A stretch of 64,000 bases of DNA, taken from the NCBI RefSeq assembly GCF_022045235.1, contig NW_027266264.1, positions 81,158,001 to 81,222,000 of the forward strand. The letters run 5' to 3'. The DNA is from Haliotis cracherodii (taxonomy: Eukaryota). Positions 6,702 to 20,600 of this stretch are shown here, piece after piece (within the stretch, counting starts at the first letter, position 1; the number at the start of each line of letters is the position of its first letter). The position numbers and the translations under genes were made by a program. The notes below the pieces were generated by a model. It worked only from the letters and a program-made list of their open reading frames with translations, was not told the DNA's origin and searched no databases.

Positions 6702-7315
6702 CTGAATGAAAACAGAAAATACATAAACACACAGTATCTAGGAACAAACAGCAACAAGACAATTGTAAATATGACCTCACCCAAACCCAATACTGTGAAT
6801 TCCTCATAGTCTTGTTATTTGCAGACTTAAGGCGATGCCATTAGTTGGTATACACACACTAGGACCCATAACCCAAACTGACCACATGACCTAAACATTT
6901 CTCACAGACAGACCCTCCTGCTTCACATGCACGAGACACTGTCTCTATGACGTCACACATCTACACATCAAGACCATTGGCTGAAGAGTCAAATTTCCTG
7001 CCGATCTTCCCTCGAACAACATATGTTACAGATTGTTCTGGTCAATATGCCAAGAGCCATAATAATAGCTTGATTTGGGGTTAATTTCTCCAAAATAACT
7101 CAAAATATAAACATTTCCTTTTTACTTTTGCAAAATTTGTCAAAACAAGATAAATTGGTAAATTAGGTACACTGTACTCTACAGGTCACCATGAACATGA
7201 TGAAATGATAAAAGTTTAAAAAAACTCAGTTAAAAACAATATGTTTAGTGAGTGAGTATTATGCCACTTGGAACAATGTTTCAGTTAAATCACTACATGT
7301 CAGCGTACTCCATAC

Positions 7316-7524
7316 CATTTCTTGGGAACGGTGAGTGGCTTGTATTTTCCGTATTTTATTTTCCACTCAATCTTTTCTTTGCAACGTTGACACAAGCTTG
7401 GGAGTTCTGTTTGATTGATGGTAGCAATCTTCTTGGATTTGTTATACATGTCATTTCTGAAGACGGATGTATTTGGATGTTTCTGCTTGCGAGATTTGTT
7501 CACATTTCCTTTTTGGCTGCTCAT
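7316..7524 (-). CDS. C9orf85: C9orf85 homolog, first coding exon
   Basis: MSSQKGNVNKSRKQKHPNT..CQRCKEKIEWKIKYGKYKPL matches the human C9orf85 N-terminus. GTATG donor at 7315; acceptor at 7545-7546 implies an upstream non-coding exon. Joined CDS is 669 nt = 222 aa. Confidence 0.95.
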
Positions 7525-9324: not shown

Positions 9325-9971
9325 ATGAACGGCTTGTCTCTCAGTGAGCTTTGTTGTCTTTTCTGTTGTCCGCCATGTCCATCCCGAATTGCAGCTAAAC
9401 TGGCATTCCTTCCTCCGGAGCCGACTTATTCCTTGGTTTCCGACGAAGCAGGGTCCAGGTACAGCCTACACCTCAAAGATCGGGCGGAATGGCAGTATAC
9501 CCAGAGAGAACTAGACTGCATTGAAGTCTTTATGACACGAACCGCAAGAGGAAACCAAATCTCCTGTATGTTTGCTAGATGTTCCCCAAACGCACGCTTC
9601 ACCATTCTGTTCAGCCATGGAAATGCTGTTGATCTTGGACAGATGAGTAGCTTTTATATTGGACTTGGCTCAAGAATCAATTGCAATATATTCAGCTTTG
9701 ACTATTCTGGCTATGGTGTGAGCTCAGGAAAACCTTCAGAAAAAAATCTCTATGCAGACATAGATGCAGCCTGGCAGGCACTGCGGACAAGATATGGAAT
9801 AAATCCCCAGAATGTCATCCTATATGGCCAGAGTATAGGAACTGTACCAACAGTCGACCTAGCTTCCAGATATGAAGTCGGTGCTGTCGTCCTTCACTCA
9901 CCCCTGATGTCTGGAATGAGGGTTGCTTTCCCCGAAACCAAGAGAACCTGGTTCTTTGATGCCTTCCCCAG
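9325..9971 (+). CDS. ABHD17: Alpha/beta hydrolase domain-containing protein 17 (protein depalmitoylase), coding exon 1
   Basis: [35 protein letters not shown] palmitoylation Cys cluster, SHGNAVDLG, nucleophile GQSIG; AG|GTGTGC donor, phase 2. Confidence 0.97.
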
Positions 9972-10028
9972 GTGTGCTTTATGCTCATATTATGTGAAGT
10001 CCATGAATTTTATCTAATCAATTAATAT

Positions 10029-10268
10029 CTGAAGACCCGGGTTAGAATGGGTCTTCAGCAACCCATGCTTGTTGTAAGAGACGACTATGCTGGTTGTAAG
10101 GTTCGACTAACGGGATTGGGGGTGCTCACTGACTTGTTTGTGGCTTGTCATCCTATCCCAACTGTTCATGATGTCTATCATTGGATTATCAGGTCCAGAC
10201 TTGATTATTTACAGACCACCTTGACATAGCTGCAATATTGCTGTGTGTGGTGTTAAACAACAAACAAA
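10029..10268 (+). mobile_element. Retroposon family A copy in ABHD17 intron
   Basis: TGAAGACCCGGGTTAGAATGGGTCTTCAGCAACCC head through ...GTTAAACAACAAAC tail. Confidence 0.85.
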
Positions 10269-10915: not shown

Positions 10916-11233
10916 CAGCATTAGAAACTGGCACTAGTCCTAATACTCCCATAGTCCTTGCCAAACTGCCCAAAAGTTAAGGTATTGTAAGAACTAGTAG
11001 AAATGGAAATGCAGCAGTAGAAACTAACAGTTTCAGTCCACTAGTCCTTATAATGATAGCATATAGCTAAACCTTTAAAAATGTCAAAATTCTACAAGTC
11101 CTTAGGATACCTTTACTATTGGGCAGTTTGGCAAGGACTATAGGACTAGTGCCAATTTCTAACCCTATATATTATATATTATCATTATAGACATGATAGA
11201 CTAGTGGACTAGAACAGTTAGTTTCTATCGCTG
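10916..11233. mobile_element. hAT-like MITE containing an inverted copy of itself
   Basis: Termini CAGCATTAGAAAC / TTTCTATCGCTG; inner inverted copy ~11012-11167; same family at 17336-17649 and a fragment at ~58873-58930. Confidence 0.65.
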
Positions 11234-12889
11234 ATCTACATTTGAAGCAGGAGTTGCAGGCATTTTCCTCCATGATCTTTTATGATGCAATTGATGCTAA
11301 CTGCTGGAGTAAAGGTCAAGGAGCAAATACCTCTGTGTGCATACCATGGTATAATGGGTGGTTCAAACTGTCTACACCTATGTCACTGTGAGCTGAATCA
11401 AATTCAGTAATCATGAACATAGCAGCTGTTTATTCTCATAACTTGGTGCTACTCTGTCATGTCCATATCAAATGTGCAATATTGATTTCATCTCTTGCAT
11501 ATTGGCTATCCAATACAAGTCTTGAGACATAATGATAACCCAATATGTTATTTTTTGGTGTCTATTCATTCCGTTTTCTATTTTTGCACATGAAAATATT
11601 TCAAACTCCCTCCCTATTTGAGAACATGCTGAAGGATATAATTACAAGTAATTCGTCACCAGCCTTGGCCATTAATCACGTTAATCATGCTAATTACCTT
11701 GACATAGCTCAGAGCCAATGCAAGGAGAACCATGAGCCTTAGTTGTTTTCAATGTTTATCAATGAGATCAGGTACTTTAGTGTATGATTGTGAGGCAGGT
11801 ACCGATATCAATTACAATACCTTTACCTCACAGATGTTTCTTGCATGCATAACATGTGGTAACTTGTTAATGCATAAATTATCACATGAATGGTAGATTT
11901 GTGAATTATGCTTGGAATTTGACCAACTATGTTTACTTTAACATACAATATATCTGACTTTAGTTTCCTCAAAGTGAACATCAGTTATGAATTTTAAATG
12001 CCTTCAAACAGTAGAAAGTGATATTACTAGAAACTCATGAATCAGATCTCGTTACTGTGGCAACCTTACTTTCCTGATCAGTACAGTAGTAGATGAATAC
12101 CCACAGTGAAATGCTAATATTGCTAAAATGGTGTAAAATTATACTCGCTCACTCCCTAAATCTCAAACTGACTTGATGTGGATCCTTGGTTTATCAGCAC
12201 CATATCCGTGGTCATGTTTATCACCATGTGGTAAAGTGTCTACCTCCTGTGCTTATTGTGTGATCTAACTGAAATATGCTTCATCATGTTCAAAGAGGTT
12301 TTCAGCACAACTCACTAACTCACTATAAGTGGTTTGGTTTTGGGTAAGGTTTGGGGTTGTTTGTTGTTTAATGCCTCACCCACCAATATAAGTGGTTAGT
12401 AACCAGTTTATCTGCATTATTTCAGGGGAAACCAAACTGTTAACATCAGCCAAGTCCCAAAACATTCCTTTCTGATGATGATGTAGGCTTGGTTGTCATG
12501 GTTATGTGTCACATGGTATGGGAAATATGTGTATGGAGTACTTTAATATTCATGTCATTTATGAAGGAACAAGACCCAGTCCTTTTTCAGTTTTATTTGA
12601 TGATGATTATTTGGTGGAAACAAATTCTTAAATGTTGCATAAGACGAGAGGAAAATCCCCTTGACTATGTTCAGAATGGTGACACACATGTTCAGAACAA
12701 ACTCAATAGTTTTATTAACAAATGGGTAATCTGTGCTTTATGGAAATATTCAAAAAGCTAGAATCAGCAATTAACAGAATTAATATGATTATATCCAGTC
12801 ACGGTCATAACTCGGTCGATGCATCTGTCTTTTGCATAGTTCAACATGTTCAGGGTCATGGCAGTTATTGGATCCTACACTGGGTTTTT

Positions 12890-13357
12890 ATTAGAATTGA
12901 GTATCGCTTGGTATCTTGCAATACAATTTGTATCACGATACAGATTGGCGATACTACAGGTATCACAATACACCACTTCAGATAGTAAGAAATGATGAAA
13001 TCATTGAAATACAGGTCTAAAACCTCTTTCTTCATACATTTATTTATTTATTTATTTTATTGTTATCTCAAAATCTTTAAGTTTAACAATGAAAACCACA
13101 AGAGAAAAAAAAAAGTTTTAAATTATGGGATGGTTATTAAATGTACACTAATAGTTAGTGTGTCCTCGGTCACCATGTCCTTGTGTTCTACCGTTCTTAC
13201 AGGTGAAGCTATGCTACTTCTGTCATTAACGAATAGGTAACTCTATTAGCTCCTGTTCTATTTATAGCGTATTGCAATTTCACAAAATGACGATTCAAGT
13301 ATCATGTTTTCATAAGTATCAATGTTATCGTATGTATCGGTGAATCGTTACAGCCTT
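12890..13357. mobile_element. Degenerate hAT-type MITE remnant
   Basis: Right end GTATCGGTGAATCGTTACAGCCTTA with repeated GTATCG/CGATAC subterminal motifs; left end not identified. Confidence 0.4.
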
Positions 13358-13720
13358 AGTTTTTATCATGTGTTCATGATCTAAGCCATCCGTATCATCA
13401 GCCTGGAAGTCTAGTGGTTAAATGTGTGAAGCCATTCTCTGTGTGCCCTGTCATATTGCTGACATTGCTGCAAGTGGTGATGAAGTCTCCACACTACTTT
13501 CCTGATGCATACATAAATCAGGAAATCTCTCTCTGGTCCAAAGATAATTTCAGTGTGCAGCATTACTGGAGTTTGAAGTTTTGGGACTTTCATACAAATA
13601 ACCGTGTCTAGCCCTACGGTGTCATAATGGATATTATCCTGTCAATGTGGCATTTTCATCCTTATCAGACAGAAAAAGCAGTAATGGAATTTTGGCTCAT
13701 CACCATTTTTTCTGTTTCAG

Positions 13721-13940
13721 CATTGACAAAGTTCCTAAAATCACATCCCCTGTGCTGGTGATTCATGGGACGGAAGATGAAGTGATAGACTTTTCTCATG
13801 GACTTGCAATTTATGAGCGATGTCCTCGCACAGTAGAACCACTGTGGGTAGAGGGCGCTGGACACAATGATGTGGAACTTTATGGACAGTATTTAGAGCG
13901 CTTAAAACAGTTCATCAACGTAGAGCTGGCTATCAATTGA
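13721..13940 (+). CDS. ABHD17: ABHD17 coding exon 2 (catalytic Asp and His)
   Basis: ttttctgtttcAG acceptor; AG+C=Ser; [28 protein letters not shown]...[10 protein letters not shown]; joined CDS is 867 nt = 288 aa. Confidence 0.97.
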
Positions 13941-14090
13941 CTAGAGGAGGGCATTGAGGGAGCAACGGAAACTGAGAATGATGTGGAGACACCCAACGAA
14001 GAACCTGAGGCAGTCTCAACCTCTCAGACTCAACACACAACCGAAGAGGTGGAGTTGAAGAACAACTCTGCTGTTGAACGGGTTGTCTGA
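13941..14090 (+). CDS. Putative stop-codon readthrough extension of ABHD17 (49 aa, acidic)
   Basis: Stop context TGA-CTAG; in-frame LEEGIEGATETENDVETPNEEPEAVSTSQTQHTTEEVELKNNSAVERVV*. Confidence 0.6.
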   Translation, partial: LEEGIEGATETENDVETPNEEPEAVSTSQTQHTTEEVELKNNSAVERVV

Positions 14091-17000
14091 CAATACAGGG
14101 ACTTAGGGACACAGTCCTGTCCATGACAGGTTCTCTCATCTACATGGGTTGCACTCCGAGCATCCACGTATCATGGCTACAGTGAGTGATCTGACTCAGG
14201 AGGCTGCCGTTTTTCACTTCATTGGAACTGTCGACTACAGTAGTGTTTTTGTCTAATACACAAGGATAACTTTCCTAGTAAATGTTTGAATCCTTTCAAC
14301 TTCAGGCTGTTTGTAAATTCTTGAGATTACTATCAACTGCAGCAGTTCTTGATGTCATTTGAGAAATTACCTATGATAAATGTCAGTTTTTGTGTTTAAA
14401 TGTTCAAAATTTCTGGATACTACTGGAGTGCTCTGGGACTTTGGAATCTGTAAAGTTTCAAAATTCTGTTTGATGTTGAGAGTTTTTGGGGAATCCGAGT
14501 TATGTGAACGTTTCTACCACAACAATCCACATACACAACTGGATTTACCACCCTCCCCTTGTGTACCATGGACTTCCCTATCAGTTTCCCCCTCTTTGCC
14601 CACAGGAAGAATACAGTCGAGATGATTGTATAGTAATAGCAAATGGTTCATTTGCTTGTGTACAGTCTGTAATATATATATAATGTTGTGATCACTGTTA
14701 TGTATGTGAGCAGATATGCCAAAACTTAAAATGGTGAAATATAATTTTTCATCTCTCTTTTGTTGAAACATTTAACTATTAATGGTCTTTGCGGGATCAC
14801 ACTAGCCTGAGGAGGGCTAGCATGTCATCAATATGTTTGTTAGGATATATACTTTTTAGAGGATGATTTGTATGTGGTTATTGTAAGAAGTTATTGATAA
14901 TGTCATATGTTTGGTTTTCAGTTCAGGTTAATTTTTAAGTGGCATAGTATATATATATATAAGGTTTTTGTATGTACCTAAAGTTAGCCTAAAACTCTTT
15001 GTTCATTATTGATGCCTTCATCACACATGCTGAGTCCCCAATGTCAGGCTAGGAACTTCTTTAATTATATGAAACTATTCCACTAGCACACACTGCTGAA
15101 TGATGAATAATCACTCATATCTGTATAAGGACCAACAATTATATACATGATGTATGACCAGTGTTATCAAAAGGGCTGCTAGAACTTTTTGTGTGTGTTA
15201 TTCAAATGGCTGAACCACAAGCTCACCTTACAATATACTTCTGTCATAGCTCATGTAGACTGTATTTCATGCCCTTCAATCTACCGAAATACTCTGGTTT
15301 ACAGACTATTTAGCATTGAACTTTCTTACAAAATAGGTTTTGTTTATTTCAATTTTAATTTCCGATTTTATGTAGGAGTTGAGGACATTGTCTCAGCTGA
15401 TAAAATCATATGAGCATGAGTCGCTAGCTTCCTTTTATGTAATCACTGCTTTAGCATGTTCAGTATCACACCTATGTATCGCAGTGCTTCAAATGTGTAG
15501 AAAATGTTTCATGATAATGAATCATGATAAGGGAATAGAATCAGTATTTCCGTATTTATCACTGTCAACATGGTTAAGGACAAAAATACTTTAGGTGCCA
15601 ATTTCTCATAAGCTAGGGTTCATGAATATGATGTATGGCCATATAAACAATGTACAAATAATACAACTTGTAGCATAGTGCATATGACAGATGGAAAGAG
15701 TATTCAAACCTCCATTACCTTGAGGTGAAGGATGTAAGAATGATGATGATGATGAAAGGTCAAGATGTTCATATTGGTTCAACAGCAGGGTGTTCAATGT
15801 CGGCCAACATGGACTAGCTTGTAAAGTTGCCCCCCTTCCCTATGTCATCAGTTGATCTGTTGAACAAGTGATGGAGTGATTTTAATCATGCTAATACTGT
15901 TCATTGTGCATTTGTTTTCCTTCCCCATCTTCACAAAAGTATCATGGTTATGACATCATTTTTGGATTATTGATAAGCAAGGCAATATTAGGTGAATTTT
16001 AGGAAGTAGAATTGGTTTCATGGAATTATCAGATAGAGCGTCAGTTGTTTATGAAGATATCTGTCAGCAAATATGTTGTATTGTATGGGTTGGTAATTAG
16101 TTGTCACATTAAATATGAATATTCAAGGGCAAGTCAGAGAAGAACTTGCAATTGTAGGTCTCTTCCCTATGAAAGTTTGACCAGCAGTGCACTGTACCAT
16201 GACGCCTAACCCTAACAGTAGCTGATTATACTGGGACATGACAGGTACACCCAGTGAACAACCGGAGGAAACTTGTGTTATATATCTGAACAAAATACCG
16301 CCAACTCTGTACTTACCTATGTTTATGAAATACTGTTTTGTTTTATATAACATTTATATGTCTTCGCAATCTATGTTATTATTGTCATCTATCTAGCATG
16401 TCTGTAGTATTTTAATTCCAACTTTGCCTGTCTTTATTTCACTTGACCAAGGAGTGATGATATTACGATACTGCCTTTATGGTGGTGGTCAGCACAGGGA
16501 CTAATATCACCAGCAGCACACCAGGGAAACTTGATTGGGGAAACTCAGTAACTCAGCATTTGTGACCCACCAGGAGAAAAGGGACATTATGGGTGCTAGG
16601 ATACAATTGTGCTGTGACTTCATAAAGAAAGATGTTTGATGTCAACTTCCTTCTGTAAAAATAGCCTTGTGTGTGGACAGTAAAAAATATCATATTTTTT
16701 TCTTATTAGTTCGTGATTTTATTTCAAAACATTTCTGCATATATATCTACTTTTAACTAATCAGACGTTATATCTAAGATTCAGTTATTACATTAACGGT
16801 CATGAGTCTGAAAATGGGACTTGTGCCAATGTTTAGTGCTATGTATCTCTGTGATAAATATTGAAGAATTGAAGCTTATCAATTGTATTCTCGTGGTCCT
16901 AAAATACAGTAGTTTAAAAAAAATAATAAGTCAAAATGCGATTTTTCACCCATAAGGTCCCTTATCTCATGGTTGGTCACATATGTGAATAGGTAGGACA

Positions 17001-17335
17001 GTGGTGGACTGTGTGGACAAGATGCATGTTCTGAAATCATGTTACCAGTCATCTGCGGCACCACAGTTTCAATTTCCAGATTTGGCCAGAATATGATCCC
17101 TGTTATTAGGATAATTGCATAACTTGATCCGTTCCATCCCGTCAGACCCATTTATGCTTAAATGGGATGATATGTCAAAACATGAACATGATGTTTCCGA
17201 ACCTGCACTGTTCAGTAGTCTGTTCAGCTCAAAATAAGTTAGGGAACACCCATTTTTTTACTATAGTTAATCTGTCATGGCATGAAAGATTAACTGTGGT
17301 CATATAAAAAAAGGGAGTACTTTAAATTCTTTTGA

Positions 17336-17649
17336 CACCGTTGGAAATTGTCACCAGCCCTTTAGACCTTGCCAAACTCCCTGATAGTTTAGGTATCATA
17401 AAGACTAGTAGAAATTTGCCCTTTTTAAAGGTTTTACTATATGTTATCATTACAGCTGTAGAAACTAACATAGTAGTCTTCTGGTCCTTATAATGATACC
17501 ATATAGCTAAACCCTTATAATTGGCAAATTCCTACTAGTCCTTATGATACCTTAACAATTGGGCAGCTTGGCAAGGGCTACAGGACTAATGCCAATTTCT
17601 AACGCTACATTATAAGGACTAGTGGACTAAAAGTTGGTTTCTATCACTG
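17336..17649. mobile_element. hAT-like MITE containing an inverted copy of itself (second locus)
   Basis: Same modules as 10916-11233; inner copy 17453-17607 flanked by duplicated CATTA. Confidence 0.65.
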
Positions 17650-20600
17650 TTTGTGTTACATATATTGGGCAGAGATGTGGGCACAGAGTAGCCTTAAGAT
17701 ACGGATTGCTGTTGGTTTGTGGGGATGACGGCACACTGCGTCCACCGGCGCAGTAGGAGTAACTGTGCTGATCTCCCCTGAGTCTCTGTAATGTTGACTG
17801 TCTTGGTTGATACTACCATGTCCACAGTGCTTTTGACTGATGTGATATATCTCTGAAATAAAACTCTTTGAAACGTGTATATACGATGAAACCACAGGAC
17901 TTTGAGAGCTGTTCATATAGATGTGCATGTGTGATGATGATAGAGAGTTTAGTTTCAGGAACTGTTTTCTAGAGTGCTATTCACTAGTGCTGTTCACCAA
18001 TCACCATATCCAGGGATAGTCGTCACAATGATATTTACTTTTCAGAGTTCAGATTTCAATAGCTTTACCATCATATAGTAAATTAATATTTCCCTAAGAA
18101 AATAGTATTTTTCGATATATGTGCTTGAAGTATGTATGTGTTAGTATGACTTGACACGATTTGCCTGTTATGACAAAGTTTGGCTTTAATTGGTTTAAAT
18201 TTGACATTTATGAATTTGAAATTGATACAAAACTGTCAAGGCCCAAAGAACTGCAGTGTTGGTATCTTAAAAGTAAACATGTGGAGGCCATAGACATGTA
18301 ATATCATACATGCTTAGGCACGGATAATGTACTCCACAAGTATTCCATTGAATGTGTGTAAATACCTCCACCCGCTAGTTGACTGAATACATAATGCAGT
18401 GAAATCCACTGAAAAATGTACGGCTTTGTACAATGCCGGGACGTATGATATGGTGCATCCTCAAACCTTGCTACCCATTGTGAACGTTTTGGTCTGAGTG
18501 TTGAAAGCAACAATCTTTACCAGGGAATGAATCTCTGCAGACACTTCTGTTGGTCTGCCAGTTACTAGGTGTTCTAGTCCTTTATCAGTGTTTTTCATTT
18601 GGGCCACTAGAAAAGTCTCCAAGTTCAACCCATGTGTTGAAATACTCTTCAGCAATGTTTAAATTATGAAAACACTCTCTGAAAAGCATAAATATTTCTA
18701 TCTTTTCATTGGTTACATAGTTGCTCATTTATAACTGGCAGATTGTGTTTAATTTCTATTTACACAAGCTGGATTTTCTTTTAGAAAATACATGAATTTT
18801 AGTCATTTTTTATGTCTCTTGGGAAGTACTGGTTTATTTTGAAATATGTGGTTTAATATTTACCACTTGTGTTCACTACAACATGCTTAGCAATCAATTG
18901 TTCGCCTTCAGTCAGAAAACATATCCATGGCATAACTTTACTTGTCTTGAGGTCGATGAAATGGGAATAGTAGACACTCAATCACATCACCACATTGACA
19001 TGAATATCAGGCACACTTTGAATCATCGCAACTTAATGTTTATGATCAGTAGAATAACATTTGTAGATATAGGATGTCCGTGACAATTCATGTACATATC
19101 AATGCTCCTTACGTCTCAGATTTATAAATGTACTTAATAATTGATTGAACTATAATAGAATATTCTGGTATTATTCTTGTGTGAAAGATATTGATAACAG
19201 TTCTCAGTATTGAGATTTTGAAACACCTTTTTTTAAAAAAATATGATTATGTTTACCAAAACTTACTATTTCAGTCCTTAGGATTTACATTCTTTCCTGC
19301 CAAGTCAGCAATAATAGTAATTTATTAGCCATCTCTCAGACATGCGGTATGTATAAATTATGCTGTACAAATGTTTGCAACTCTGTAACTATGGTAACAT
19401 GTATATTGTGTCCCTGCCTTATGTATTGTGAAGATCGTGTAAGATAATCTGTATTCAACACTGAGGTGTGGGGTATTATTTTTGTCCTTAACCCTACACA
19501 CATTGTGGTATCGAATCACAGAAAACAATGTCACTACATATTATTAAACAGCCTTTATTCTTCACTAGTGGTCAACATGTCTTATCTTACTCCTTTGATG
19601 GTTGTCTGCCCTTTTCTTTTTCTTGAAATTGTGCTTCTGATTCCGTTGAACCTGTACCTGCATTGTCATCCTGGACCCTCAATGGCGTTGTGCCAGTGAA
19701 TGCAAATATCGGATAATAACTTAACCAAAAAAATGGCCTCAAGCTGGCAATATTAAAGGTGCAAGATCAAGGCTCTGTTATATATATTATCTTCTATTGC
19801 CCTTTGGCATTTTCTGATGAAAATGCTCTTTGTCTAAACATGCAGGCTTTGAGCTGAAACTTCATTTGATGGGTAATTTAGCTTTTGTAAAGATTGTCTG
19901 CAGTCTTTTTGCAGATTGTTTTTATAATAATCAAATGGATCTATCAACGCTGATACTCATTGCCAGTTTGTTTATTCCTGGATACCTTTACACAGCGTGA
20001 AGTAATAAACATCATGTTCTGCTCAAAAGAAGTTAAGGAACACCCAACAGTTACTCTGTCATTGCAACACACAGCCTTCCAAATGTGGGTGTCCCTTAAT
20101 TTATCTTGAGTAGTATATTTTGTTCAAAACAACTCCCAATTTTGCATCTTTAACGTGACAAATTGCCGTCACAGTCCACTACAGTGAAGGGTTATATAGG
20201 ACAGTTTAATTTGATAGATCCATTACTTAGCAACACTAAATTATATATGAGACAATTATGTTTTAGGCAATAGGCAAGTTCTTAGAAGAACTGGTCACTA
20301 GTGTGGACCTGACTTGTCAGCAGTGGCCTGTGTAGTAGACTTAATGCAATACTTCACTGGTACCAGCTGACTGGAACATACAGGTAATTGCACTATCAAT
20401 GGAGAATAATTCCATGCAAAGTTTAAAAGGAGAAATAGCCCACACCACTGCACTCCACACCATGGTGAATGTTAATTATGCTAATGAGATGGTAATTTAG
20501 GATGACATATGCTGTGATTGGATAACTCCTACAGTGACACTACATGCATTAACAGGCTAAGACCATTTCATGAGTAATACTGACATCTGGATATGACCAG

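What the first reader, a model, noticed from the sequence alone, without database searches (positions are those of the whole stretch)
13938..14090. ABHD17 looks like a programmed stop-codon readthrough gene (UGA-CUAG plus a 49-aa acidic extension)
Seen: the ABHD17 stop is TGA followed by CTAG. The frame stays open for 49 codons encoding LEEGIEGATETENDVETPNEEPEAVSTSQTQHTTEEVELKNNSAVERVV (13 Glu + 1 Asp). This is protein-like, GAR-codon-rich sequence unlike the AT-rich UTR further downstream. Established: UGA-CUAG is the readthrough-promoting context of AQP4, LDHB, MDH1 and OPRL1. Inference: a minor 338-aa isoform of this membrane-anchored depalmitoylase carries a disordered acidic tail that could change localisation or substrate choice. 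I do not know of this being described for a mollusc ABHD17.
Basis: partly seen in the sequence, partly recalled or inferred. Interest (0 to 1): 0.85.

Follow-up and report, generated by a model that had tools for sequence, protein, structure and literature searches.

The report
Conserved stop-codon readthrough in abalone ABHD17
The abalone gene for the protein-depalmitoylating enzyme ABHD17 ends in a leaky UGA-C stop followed by an in-frame tail, and that tail ends in the same four-residue motif (Glu-x-hydrophobic-hydrophobic) found after the same leaky stop in many other molluscs, worms and crustacean-like animals, so a read-through isoform is very probably real, selected and ancient.

Summary
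The Haliotis ABHD17B-like gene is single-copy, encodes 288 aa and has two coding exons. It stops at TGA 13938-13940, followed by CTAG and 49 open codons up to TGA 14088-14090.

Taken alone, this would be weak evidence. An open run of that length has about a 6% chance in this 3'UTR, and the four abalone transcripts available are too similar for a dN/dS test.

The comparison with other animals decides it. Among 80 ABHD17 loci from metagenomes, 15 further well-diverged lineages have TGA-C at the same position (7 lophotrochozoan-type, 8 in a crustacean-like clade). Each has an in-frame extension of 6 to 247 codons that cannot be aligned between lineages. Each extension nevertheless ends in E-x-[L/V/F]-[L/V] immediately before the second stop. 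Haliotis ends in E-R-V-V. The background rate of this ending is 0.87% of ORF ends.

- The motif codons differ at synonymous sites.
- One crustacean-like pair shows clear coding-type substitution.
- The second stops are ordinary.
- Selenocysteine, splicing, paralogs and repeats were tested and not supported.

The fly ortholog (CG33096) and two mosquito orthologs are already listed as "ancient" TGA-C readthrough candidates (Jungreis 2016). This case is therefore a new member of a known kind. It adds a much wider phylogenetic span and a conserved C-terminal motif, possibly a PDZ-type ligand. Translation itself was not shown.

The parts
9325..9971 (+). ABHD17B-like coding exon 1. It starts at ATG 9325, carries the N-terminal Cys cluster and the GQSIG serine motif, and ends in a split codon AG| before the GT donor at 9972.
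   Evidence: ORF. 100% match to P0001 (Haliotis ABHD17B-like, 288 aa). Pfam Hydrolase_4. The 9971|13721 joint is present in all four transcript contigs. Donor sequence read.
13721..13937 (+). ABHD17B-like coding exon 2. It holds the last base of the split Ser codon plus 72 codons, ending ...[10 protein letters not shown].
   Evidence: The C-terminus and stop position are shared by Patella, Littorina, Aplysia, Sinanodonta, Dreissena and Lineus proteins, all 288 aa.
13938..13944 (+). Leaky first stop: UGA followed by CUAG. The family-wide conserved feature is UGA-C.
   Evidence: TGA-C sits at the orthologous position in 15 other motif-bearing lineages. No listed variant at these bases in the four transcript contigs. 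UGA-CUAG is described as readthrough-promoting in PMC5100048.
13941..14075 (+). Read-through linker of 45 codons. It is acidic, presumably disordered and lineage-specific.
   Evidence: No homolog among 1.84 billion representative proteins. No Pfam family. Unique in the genome. Coding-like periodicity. One nonsynonymous variant at 14040 A>C (Thr to Pro) in run X5.
14076..14087 (+). Terminal tetrapeptide E-R-V-V (GAA CGG GTT GTC). This is the conserved E-x-hydrophobic-hydrophobic C-terminal motif.
   Evidence: The same motif sits directly before the second stop in 15 other lineages. Background rate is 18 of 2066 ORF ends.
14088..14090 (+). Second stop (TGA), the terminator of the read-through isoform.
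14091..15299 (+). Remainder of the 3'UTR covered by the reads laid. It is T-rich and holds most of the variation between runs. Contig lengths imply the UTR continues to about 16580-16970.
   Evidence: (table 8 and tables 3-4).

Best explanation
The single-copy abalone ABHD17 gene is a depalmitoylase anchored to membranes by an N-terminal palmitoylated Cys cluster. It has a selected, leaky UGA-C stop, here in the strong UGA-CUAG form.

Most ribosomes terminate and make the 288-aa enzyme. A minority decode the UGA with a near-cognate tRNA and continue for 49 codons. The result is a 338-aa isoform: the same catalytic domain, then a flexible acidic linker, then a new C-terminus, E-R-V-V-COOH.

The selected feature is this terminal tetrapeptide, E-x-[L/V/F]-[L/V]. 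It lies at the very C-terminus in every lineage, whatever the linker length, so it most likely acts as a docking motif that needs a free C-terminus. The best guess is a PDZ-type ligand resembling the Crumbs ERLI and glycophorin C EYFI tails. It would tether a fraction of the enzyme to a membrane scaffold.

Shown here:
- the stop, the frame and the motif;
- their conservation across phyla;
- a coding-type substitution pattern in one crustacean-like pair;
- the absence of splicing or SECIS explanations.

Inferred:
- that ribosomes actually read through in abalone, and at what rate;
- that the motif binds a PDZ domain.

The confidence given is for selected readthrough that exposes the terminal motif. 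The PDZ part alone I put at about 0.4.
For: (1) Gene and transcript.
- 100% match to Haliotis ABHD17B-like, 288 aa.
- Four spliced transcript contigs from four organism labels carry the 9971|13721 joint and run through the stop and extension. There is no other joint near it and no indel in the extension.

(2) The stop position is ancient. Named mollusc and nemertean orthologs all end ...ELA[IVL]N or ...ELATI at residue 288.

(3) Sixteen distinct lineages, counting Haliotis, share the pattern. Their CDS ends are 68-84% identical at the nucleotide level.
- All have TGA-C at this position.
- All have an in-frame extension ending E-x-[LVF]-[LV]-stop. The extension lengths are 6, 6, 6, 7, 10, 26, 29, 41, 49, 62, 75, 77, 85, 115, 221 and 247 codons.
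- Background for the motif is 18/2066 = 0.87% of ORF ends in the same UTRs. The binomial P for 16 or more of 30 is about 1e-25.

(4) The motif codons vary synonymously: GAA/GAG, CTC/CTT/CTG/TTG/TTA, GTG/GTC. The linkers are unalignable between lineages.

(5) First and second stops differ.
- First stops: TGA 16/16, +4 C 16/16.
- Second stops: TGA 7, TAG 7, TAA 2, with +4 C in only 4/16.

(6) L016 against L041: 214 aligned extension codons, with 76 synonymous and 58 nonsynonymous differences. Differences by codon position are 49/32/115, and all indels are in frame.

(7) Several lineages use other classical leaky contexts: CAA-UUA in L005, L006 and L025, and CGG in L003 and L020.

(8) The fly ortholog CG33096-RG (79 codons, TGA-C) and the Anopheles orthologs AGAP010402 (69 codons) and AGAP013018 (93 codons) are listed as 'Ancient' readthrough candidates in PMC5100048 Data S1. 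CG33096 is the fly FAM108/ABHD17 homolog (PMC3506735).

(9) No SECIS in the window's 3'UTR or in 15 loci.
Against: - There is no direct evidence of translation past the stop in abalone or any other species here. I had no Ribo-seq, peptides or reporter data.
- The four abalone runs differ at only about 0.2-0.8% of UTR sites, so they cannot test for purifying selection on the extension. The one listed variant in it is nonsynonymous (14040, Thr to Pro).
- The 49-codon open frame alone has about a 6% chance.
- Taxon labels of the metagenomic loci are inferred from best hits and a poorly resolved quick tree.
- Several TGA-C lineages lack the motif at the end of their open frame: L002, L012, L013, L020, L045, L047.
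- For the PDZ idea, position -2 is variable (R, K, A, V, T). Position -2 is normally the main specificity position of PDZ ligands. No binding test was run.
- The abalone second stop is itself TGA-C.
Confidence: 0.78

Rival explanations
1. The tail is a chance open frame. It is ordinary 3'UTR that happens to be purine-rich and stop-free. UGA-CUAG gives at most a low, unselected leak, and the E-R-V-V ending is coincidence.
For: An open run of 49 or more codons has a 5.7-7.6% chance here. TGACTAG is not enriched in the window. The opposite strand is open over the same stretch, as expected for purine-rich DNA. The extension has no homolog anywhere. The only listed variant is nonsynonymous.
Against: The ending matches a motif found after the orthologous TGA-C stop in 15 other lineages, against a 0.87% background. 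The stop is TGA-C like all of them. Codon-position periodicity and composition differ from the rest of the UTR. The stop, frame and ending are kept without indels in four transcripts.
Confidence: 0.12
2. The tail is coding but is reached by alternative splicing or RNA editing of the stop, not by readthrough.
For: Contigs drop rare isoforms, so a minor splice form cannot be excluded. In Drosophila the readthrough region of CG33096-RG is itself spliced. L018 and L019 differ as if by an alternative 3' exon inside the extension.
Against: The only joint touching the gene in four runs is 9971|13721, and there are no listed letter changes at 13938-13940. In lineages with extensions of 6-10 codons the motif lies 18-30 nt after the stop, in both genomic and transcript contigs (L001, L004, L005-L007, L010). 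That leaves no room for an intron. Exclusive use of TGA-C at the first stop is unexplained by splicing.
Confidence: 0.03
3. UGA encodes selenocysteine, which would make ABHD17 a selenoprotein with a longer C-terminus.
For: The first stop is TGA in every motif-bearing lineage.
Against: No SECIS-like element at E <= 1 in window 13000-20000, which covers the whole 3'UTR, or in 15 related loci. The UGA lies between a folded domain and a disordered linker, not in a redox motif. The +4 C and the CAA-UUA, CGG and CUAG contexts are readthrough signatures.
Confidence: 0.01
4. Readthrough is real and selected, but the terminal motif is not a docking ligand. It could fold back on the hydrolase as an autoinhibitory or membrane-contacting tail, or act as a C-terminal degron that sets the level of the extended isoform. 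This is a rival only to the PDZ part of the best explanation, so its confidence overlaps with that of the best explanation.
For: Position -2 of the motif is not of one PDZ class (R, K, A, V, T). Hydrophobic C-termini of readthrough products are known triggers of degradation (my own knowledge). No binding test was done.
Against: A pure degron does not explain why a leaky TGA-C is kept in 16 of 16 lineages rather than replaced by a tight stop. Strict placement at the free C-terminus with an invariant Glu at -3 is typical of C-terminus readers such as PDZ domains (inference).
Confidence: 0.3

Closest known systems
Drosophila CG33096-RG and Anopheles AGAP010402 / AGAP013018 readthrough candidates (Jungreis et al. 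2016, PMC5100048, Data S1)
   Same: They are orthologous genes: CG33096 is the fly FAM108/ABHD17 homolog. They have a TGA-C first stop and extensions of 79, 69 and 93 codons. They are classed as 'Ancient' with 'Stop Orthologous: Yes' between fly and mosquito.
   Different: They are known only as rows in a supplementary table, under CG/AGAP numbers. No motif or function is described, and they cover Diptera only. The present case is a mollusc, and the same pattern appears in bivalve-like, annelid-like and crustacean-like lineages with a shared C-terminal tetrapeptide. I could not read the dipteran extensions, so whether they end in the motif is untested.
Mammalian LDHB and MDH1 readthrough (extension ends in a PTS1 peroxisomal signal)
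   Same: A leaky UGA-CUA(G) stop exposes a short C-terminal targeting motif on a minor isoform of a housekeeping enzyme (summarised in PMC5100048).
   Different: The motif here is E-x-hydrophobic-hydrophobic, not [SAC]-[KRH]-[LM]. Linker length is highly variable. The target compartment or partner is unknown.
UGA-CUAG readthrough genes AQP4, OPRL1, OPRK1, MAPK10 (Loughran et al. 2014, as cited in PMC5100048)
   Same: The abalone stop has exactly UGA-CUAG.
   Different: CUAG is not conserved among ABHD17 orthologs. Only UGA-C is, with CAU, CAC, CAG, CAA-UUA or CGG elsewhere. CUAG is therefore one of several interchangeable leaky contexts here.
C-terminal PDZ ligands of the E-x-hydrophobic-hydrophobic type: Crumbs ERLI (Pals1/Stardust, Par-6), glycophorin C and SynCAM EYFI (MPP1/CASK), neurexin EYYV (my own knowledge, not tested here)
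   Same: Glu at -3, hydrophobic residues at -1 and 0, and an absolute requirement to be at the free C-terminus. ERVV, EVFV and EKFL fit this pattern.
   Different: No binding was shown. Position -2 varies more than in any one PDZ class. ABHD17 is a lipid-anchored enzyme, not a transmembrane receptor tail.

Membership tests
ABHD17 / FAM108 depalmitoylases | Alpha/beta-hydrolase domain with a GxSxG serine motif and orthology to named ABHD17 proteins | tested here: met
   Exon 1 matches P0001 (Haliotis ABHD17B-like) at 100%, and hundreds of named ABHD17A/B/C proteins at E down to 1e-145. Pfam Hydrolase_4 and Abhydrolase hits on both exons. GQSIG is present.
ABHD17 / FAM108 depalmitoylases | N-terminal cysteine cluster (palmitoylation and membrane anchor) | tested here: met
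   CCLFCCPPC is present at residues 10-18 of P0001 and of all orthologs fetched. Its role is taken from PMC3506735.
Programmed stop-codon readthrough genes | Leaky stop context (UGA, C at +4, or a longer known motif) | tested here: met
   UGA-CUAG in the window. TGA-C in 16 of 16 motif-bearing lineages, while second stops are mixed.
Programmed stop-codon readthrough genes | In-frame downstream ORF kept across species with protein-level constraint | tested here: met
   The terminal E-x-[LVF]-[LV] is kept in 16 lineages against a 0.87% background, with synonymous codon variation. L016 against L041: 76 synonymous and 58 nonsynonymous differences, position differences 49/32/115, in-frame indels only. 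For the abalone extension itself the test is inconclusive: four near-identical transcripts, no indel, one nonsynonymous variant.
Programmed stop-codon readthrough genes | Not explained by splicing, editing, selenocysteine or a paralog | tested here: met
   A single joint, 9971|13721, and no change at the stop. No SECIS. Single-copy gene and unique extension DNA.
Programmed stop-codon readthrough genes | Direct evidence of translation beyond the stop (footprints, peptides, reporter) | not testable with these tools
   Only assembled contigs and miRNA-seq raw reads were on offer. No Ribo-seq or proteomics access.
UGA-CUAG readthrough class | CUAG after UGA, conserved among orthologs | tested here: not met
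   CUAG is present in abalone but in none of the other 15 motif-bearing lineages, which have CAN, CGN or CAA-TTA. Abalone works like this class, but the family trait is UGA-C.
Readthrough stimulated by a 3' RNA structure | Stable structure just downstream of the stop | tested here: not met
   Fold of 13938-14090: -41.1 kcal/mol against a shuffle mean of -38.5, z = -0.66.
Selenoproteins | SECIS element in the 3'UTR | tested here: not met
   No SECIS family hit at E <= 1 in window 13000-20000 or in 15 related loci.
PDZ-binding C-terminal motifs | Hydrophobic residue at the free C-terminus (position 0), fixed distance to the COOH | tested here: met
   V or L at position 0, directly before the second stop, in 16 of 16 lineages whatever the linker length.
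PDZ-binding C-terminal motifs | Class-defining residue at position -2 (S/T, hydrophobic, or D/E) | tested here: inconclusive
   Position -2 is R, K, A, V or T depending on lineage. It is compatible with Crumbs-type ERLI ligands (my own knowledge) but is not one canonical class.
PDZ-binding C-terminal motifs | Demonstrated binding to a PDZ domain | not tested
   PDZ and guanylate-kinase exons of abalone MAGUKs were located. The candidate domains are split by introns, joined models were not to be built, and no full-length protein could be fetched. No complex job was sent.

The most novel reading that the evidence does not exclude
Readthrough of the ABHD17 stop may date back to the common ancestor of molluscs, annelids and arthropods, more than 500 million years ago. 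That would make it one of the oldest conserved cellular readthrough events in animals. It would also be a clear case in Lophotrochozoa, where abundant readthrough has not been reported. Its purpose would be to expose an E-x-hydrophobic-hydrophobic C-terminus that docks a fraction of this depalmitoylase onto PDZ scaffolds of the MAGUK type. That is the very class of palmitoylated proteins (PSD-95/Dlg-like) that ABHD17 is known to act on.
Probability: 0.3. Interest if true: 0.82.

Novelty: new member of a known kind. Interest (0 to 1): 0.68.

Why it matters
Functional stop-codon readthrough is well documented in insects. Elsewhere it is regarded as rare, and very few events have a known purpose. 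Here one gene shows the same leaky stop and the same four-residue ending across several phyla, while everything in between has diverged beyond recognition. That gives three things:
- a clean natural experiment on what selection preserves in a readthrough extension;
- evidence that readthrough of a cellular gene can persist across phyla, and exists in molluscs and annelid-like worms;
- a directly testable idea for how a palmitoyl-cycle enzyme is aimed at particular membrane scaffolds.

Both the recoding field and the ABHD17 / PSD-95 / Ras depalmitoylation field can test this with simple constructs.

Tried and rejected
The DNA of named mollusc orthologs (other Haliotis, Patella, Littorina, Aplysia, bivalves) could not be fetched. 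The planned gastropod alignment of the extension was not done.
- HMMER search of the 49-aa extension against 1.84 billion proteins gave 0 hits. Pfam on it gave nothing.
- Read laying on four organism labels showed sequences too similar (about 0.2-0.8% in the UTR) for any selection test. Up to four differences in 13718-15299 were not listed, so one more substitution in the extension cannot be excluded for X1, X5 or X12. For X8, all 11 differences are listed and none lies in 13721-14090.
- RNA structure after the stop: none.
- SECIS: none.
- Paralogs or repeat origin of the extension: none.
- Ribosome-profiling support for the fly ortholog: the held supplements of Dunn 2013 do not contain CG33096. 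Jungreis 2011 is not held. The supplements of the 2026 Drosophila preprint are not held.
- PDZ test: L27_N gave no hit in the genome. PDZ and GuK exons were mapped, pointing to a Dlg-like locus on C67 and single-PDZ MAGUK candidates on C26 and C45. The domains are split by introns and I did not build joined models.
- Searching other frames of motif-less loci found the motif one frame off in L021 (an indel relative to L019). It also found EKLL endings far downstream in L045 and L079 that may be chance.
- Polyadenylation signal: no AATAAA or ATTAAA in 16300-17100.

Steps left out on purpose:
- The joined 288-aa spliced model and the read-through 338-aa protein were never sent to any tool. Exons and the extension were searched apart, by reference.
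- Nine loci looked vertebrate, some probably human: L034, L035, L037, L044, L046, L048, L049, L065, L066. They appeared only in the first automatic table. After that they were excluded and were not saved, compared or searched further.

Full report
**Observation.**
- The ABHD17 frame ends ...[10 protein letters not shown] at TGA 13938-13940.
- The next bases are CTAG.
- The frame stays open for 49 codons (13941-14087; 13 Glu, 1 Asp) up to TGA 14088-14090.

**Gene model.** Exon 1 runs from 9325 to 9971, with a GT donor at 9972. Exon 2 runs from 13721 to 13940.
- The product is 288 aa. It is identical to a protein annotated as ABHD17B-like in Haliotis rubra and H. rufescens, one of four RefSeq accessions with the same sequence.
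- Both exons hit alpha/beta-hydrolase Pfam families. The extension hits none.
- The gene is single-copy in the 1.18-Gb assembly, and the extension DNA is unique.
- I searched the exons and the extension apart, by reference. The joined spliced model and the read-through protein were not sent to any tool.

**Transcripts.** Twenty-four runs were offered, and 18 hold the stretch. I laid four, carrying four different organism labels.
- Each gives one contig of about 2.1-3.9 kb with the 9971|13721 joint. These are therefore spliced mRNA.
- Each contig runs on through the stop, the extension and at least 1.2 kb of 3'UTR.
- No other joint touches the gene. No letter change is listed at the stop or at CTAG. 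No indel lies in the extension.
- The only listed substitution in the extension is 14040 A>C in X5 (Thr to Pro).
- The runs differ at only 3 to 13 positions over 1.6 kb, so they cannot tell selection from neutrality. A few differences were not listed. Only for X8 is the list complete, and there the whole extension is identical to the window.

**What one sequence can and cannot say.** One search gives the single-sequence picture.
- An open run of 49 or more codons follows 5.7% of stop triplets in the rest of this UTR.
- TGACTAG is not enriched in the window.
- The extension is unlike the UTR behind it in composition, and it has coding-like periodicity.

On its own, then, the finding is suggestive only. 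There is no stable RNA structure after the stop (z = -0.66). There is no SECIS anywhere in the 3'UTR.

**Comparative evidence.** The stop position is old. Patella, Littorina, Aplysia, Sinanodonta, Dreissena and the nemertean Lineus all have 288-aa proteins ending ...EL(A)xN. A recent nonsense mutation is therefore excluded.

It returned 80 ABHD17 loci. For each locus I located the stop, its context and the in-frame continuation. The result was unexpected.

Fifteen further distinct lineages have TGA-C at the orthologous position, followed by an open frame whose last four residues are E-x-[L/V/F]-[L/V]:

| Loci | Last four residues | Type |
|---|---|---|
| L001, L004, L005/L006 | EALV | lophotrochozoan |
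| L007, L010 | EVFV | lophotrochozoan |
| L003, L008 | ETLL | lophotrochozoan |
| L015, L016/L032, L033, L040, L041, L042 | EKLL | crustacean-like |
| L019/L054, L025 | EKFL | crustacean-like |

Haliotis ends ERVV.

- The extensions are 6 to 247 codons long. Apart from close pairs they cannot be aligned with each other.
- The same pattern is seen in genomic contigs that still carry the intron (L003, L008) and in unspliced transcript contigs (L001, L004, and the crustacean-like set).

**Statistics and signatures of selection.**
- In the same 3'UTRs, only 18 of 2066 ORF ends in any frame match the motif (0.87%). Sixteen or more matches among about 30 distinct lineages has a binomial probability near 1e-25.
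- The lineages are related, so this is not a count of independent events. But the linkers have diverged beyond recognition while the last four residues have not. That is what purifying selection on a C-terminal motif predicts.
- The motif codons differ at synonymous sites between lineages, so the constraint is on the peptide, not on an RNA element.
- First stops are TGA with C at +4 in 16 of 16 lineages. Second stops are TGA 7, TAG 7, TAA 2, with C at +4 in only 4 of 16. Leakiness is therefore kept specifically at the first stop.
- Other classical leaky contexts appear in place of CUAG: CAA-UUA in L005, L006 and L025, and CGG in L003 and L020.
- For the alignable pair L016/L041, 214 extension codons show 76 synonymous against 58 nonsynonymous differences. 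Differences are concentrated at third positions (49/32/115), and indels are only in frame.
- No SECIS is found in 15 of these loci.

**Who the loci are.** The CDS ends are 68-84% identical at the nucleotide level within each group, except L005/L006 at 95%.
- By best hits and signature residues, L005/L006 look gastropod (97% to Aplysia over exon 2, shared GLTIYE).
- L003 and L008 look bivalve-like (the ..VDLAVN/..DLAIN ends of Dreissena type).
- L004 groups with annelids.
- L001 is an unresolved lophotrochozoan.
- Eleven loci form a well-supported clade (SH-aLRT 98) inside a weakly supported pancrustacean grouping. They share an MSGMGLS/MNGMGLS start and are probably marine crustaceans.
- These labels are inferences. 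The tree is a quick one, and most deep forks are open.

Not every lineage has the trait.
- A Daphnia-like locus has TAA-A.
- Mite-like loci have TAA.
- Coral loci have TGA-T with a different 9-residue continuation.
- Several TGA-C loci have long open frames that do not end in the motif, such as L012 (302 codons) and L013 (410 codons).
- A group of worm-like loci (L051-L078) has no stop at the usual position. Their main ORF runs on to ...PQTD-L-L / TDFL / TDLM and ends with any of the three stops. This looks like an acidic, double-hydrophobic C-terminus made constitutive, but homology to the motif is only suggestive.

**Literature.**
- No paper held links ABHD17 by name to translational readthrough, and none describes such a gene in a mollusc.
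- Data S1 of Jungreis et al. 2016 (PMC5100048) lists D. melanogaster CG33096-RG (79 codons, TGA-C, spliced readthrough region). It also lists its two A. gambiae orthologs, AGAP010402 (69 codons) and AGAP013018 (93 codons, with a further 786-codon third ORF). All are marked as readthrough candidates with an orthologous stop and classed 'Ancient'.
- CG33096 is the fly homolog of FAM108/ABHD17 (PMC3506735).
- The same paper places abundant readthrough after the split from centipedes. It does not discuss this gene, any motif, or non-arthropod orthologs.

**Mechanism.**
- Shown: a conserved TGA-C stop, a conserved in-frame C-terminal tetrapeptide, and coding-type evolution of one long extension.
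- Inferred from established knowledge of readthrough: near-cognate decoding of UGA in a C(UAG) context gives a percent-level minor isoform. In abalone this isoform would be 338 aa.
- Inferred from the anatomy: the only conserved element always sits at the free C-terminus behind a linker of arbitrary length, so it is probably read by a domain that recognises C-termini.
- From my own knowledge, E-x-hydrophobic-hydrophobic tails such as Crumbs ERLI, glycophorin C/SynCAM EYFI and neurexin EYYV bind PDZ domains of Pals1, MPP and CASK-type MAGUKs. ABHD17 depalmitoylates the MAGUK PSD-95.
- A scaffold-tethered sub-population of the enzyme is therefore my preferred reading, at perhaps 40%. The variable -2 position and the lack of any binding test keep it a hypothesis. 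Autoinhibition or a stability signal are alternatives.

**Limits.**
- No translation data were available.
- No second vetigastropod was available.
- The dipteran extension sequences were not readable here.
- Taxon labels are inferred.
- Nine vertebrate-like loci, some probably human, were seen only in the first automatic table and then left out.

**Verdict.** The support does not come from the CUAG or the acidity. It comes from a cross-phylum pattern of UGA-C plus a conserved terminal tetrapeptide.

The kind of event is known, and the fly and mosquito orthologs are on record, so I class this as a new member of a known kind. The phylogenetic depth and the motif appear to be new, and they are directly testable.

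Noticed in passing
window 14088-14126: The second stop of the abalone extension is itself TGA followed by C (TGA CAAT). Eleven more open codons follow to TGA 14124-14126. Only 4 of 16 lineages have C after the second stop, so this may be noise, but a low level of double readthrough would mask the terminal motif.
   Followed up: partly
window 10030-10268, 11012-11167, 12300-12500 (intron of ABHD17): Hundreds of contigs at 85-95% identity pile up here in all four transcriptome runs, with summed depth in the thousands to tens of thousands. Many loose ends and odd joints are seen. These are interspersed repeats that are abundant in abalone RNA.
   Followed up: no
L022, L024, L030, L031 (coral-like ABHD17 loci), just after the stop: TGA-TCTAGG is followed by a 9-codon frame, SRI[P/L]TFFRL, kept between two diverged pairs although the second stop differs (TGA against TAA). 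A third coral-like locus (L028) has TGA-TAA and no extension. This is possibly a separate, short cnidarian extension.
   Followed up: no
L051-L064, L069-L078 (worm-like ABHD17 loci): The main ORF lacks the usual ...N-stop and continues ...INVDLTP[R/K][C/S]PQTD-LL/FL/LM, ending with TAA, TGA or TAG. This is an acidic plus double-hydrophobic C-terminus made constitutive. I recall these sample series as gutless-oligochaete holobionts, but that was not checked.
   Followed up: partly
L012:1320 onward and L013:1495 onward: 302 and 410 codons stay open after TGA-CAT in two crustacean-like transcripts, without the terminal motif. This recalls the 786-codon third ORF listed for Anopheles AGAP013018.
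   Followed up: no
L018, L019, L021, L054 (one lineage): The extensions are identical up to ...DKKPNS and then diverge. L019 and L054 end SEKFL. L021 carries the same ending one frame off, through an indel. L018 continues for 55 more codons and ends ...QIEN-TGA-CAT, like a second copy of the canonical end. This suggests alternative 3' exons or assembly chimeras.
   Followed up: partly
L050:199: An in-frame TAA replaces the Glu codon of ...FVAH-E-LTN three codons before the normal TGA. It is a nonsense variant or a sequencing error in an arthropod-like ABHD17 contig.
   Followed up: no
window 7300-7524 (- strand): A 74-aa ORF on the opposite strand lies about 1.8 kb upstream of the ABHD17 start, head to head with it. 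I did not test this.
   Followed up: no
G000:C67:12576311-12720167 (- strand): Three PDZ exon hits are followed by guanylate-kinase exon hits. This is the layout of a Dlg/PSD-95-type MAGUK. Single-PDZ plus GuK candidates lie on C26 (about 2.82 Mb) and C45 (about 37.6 Mb). They could be useful if the PDZ-ligand idea is tested.
   Followed up: no
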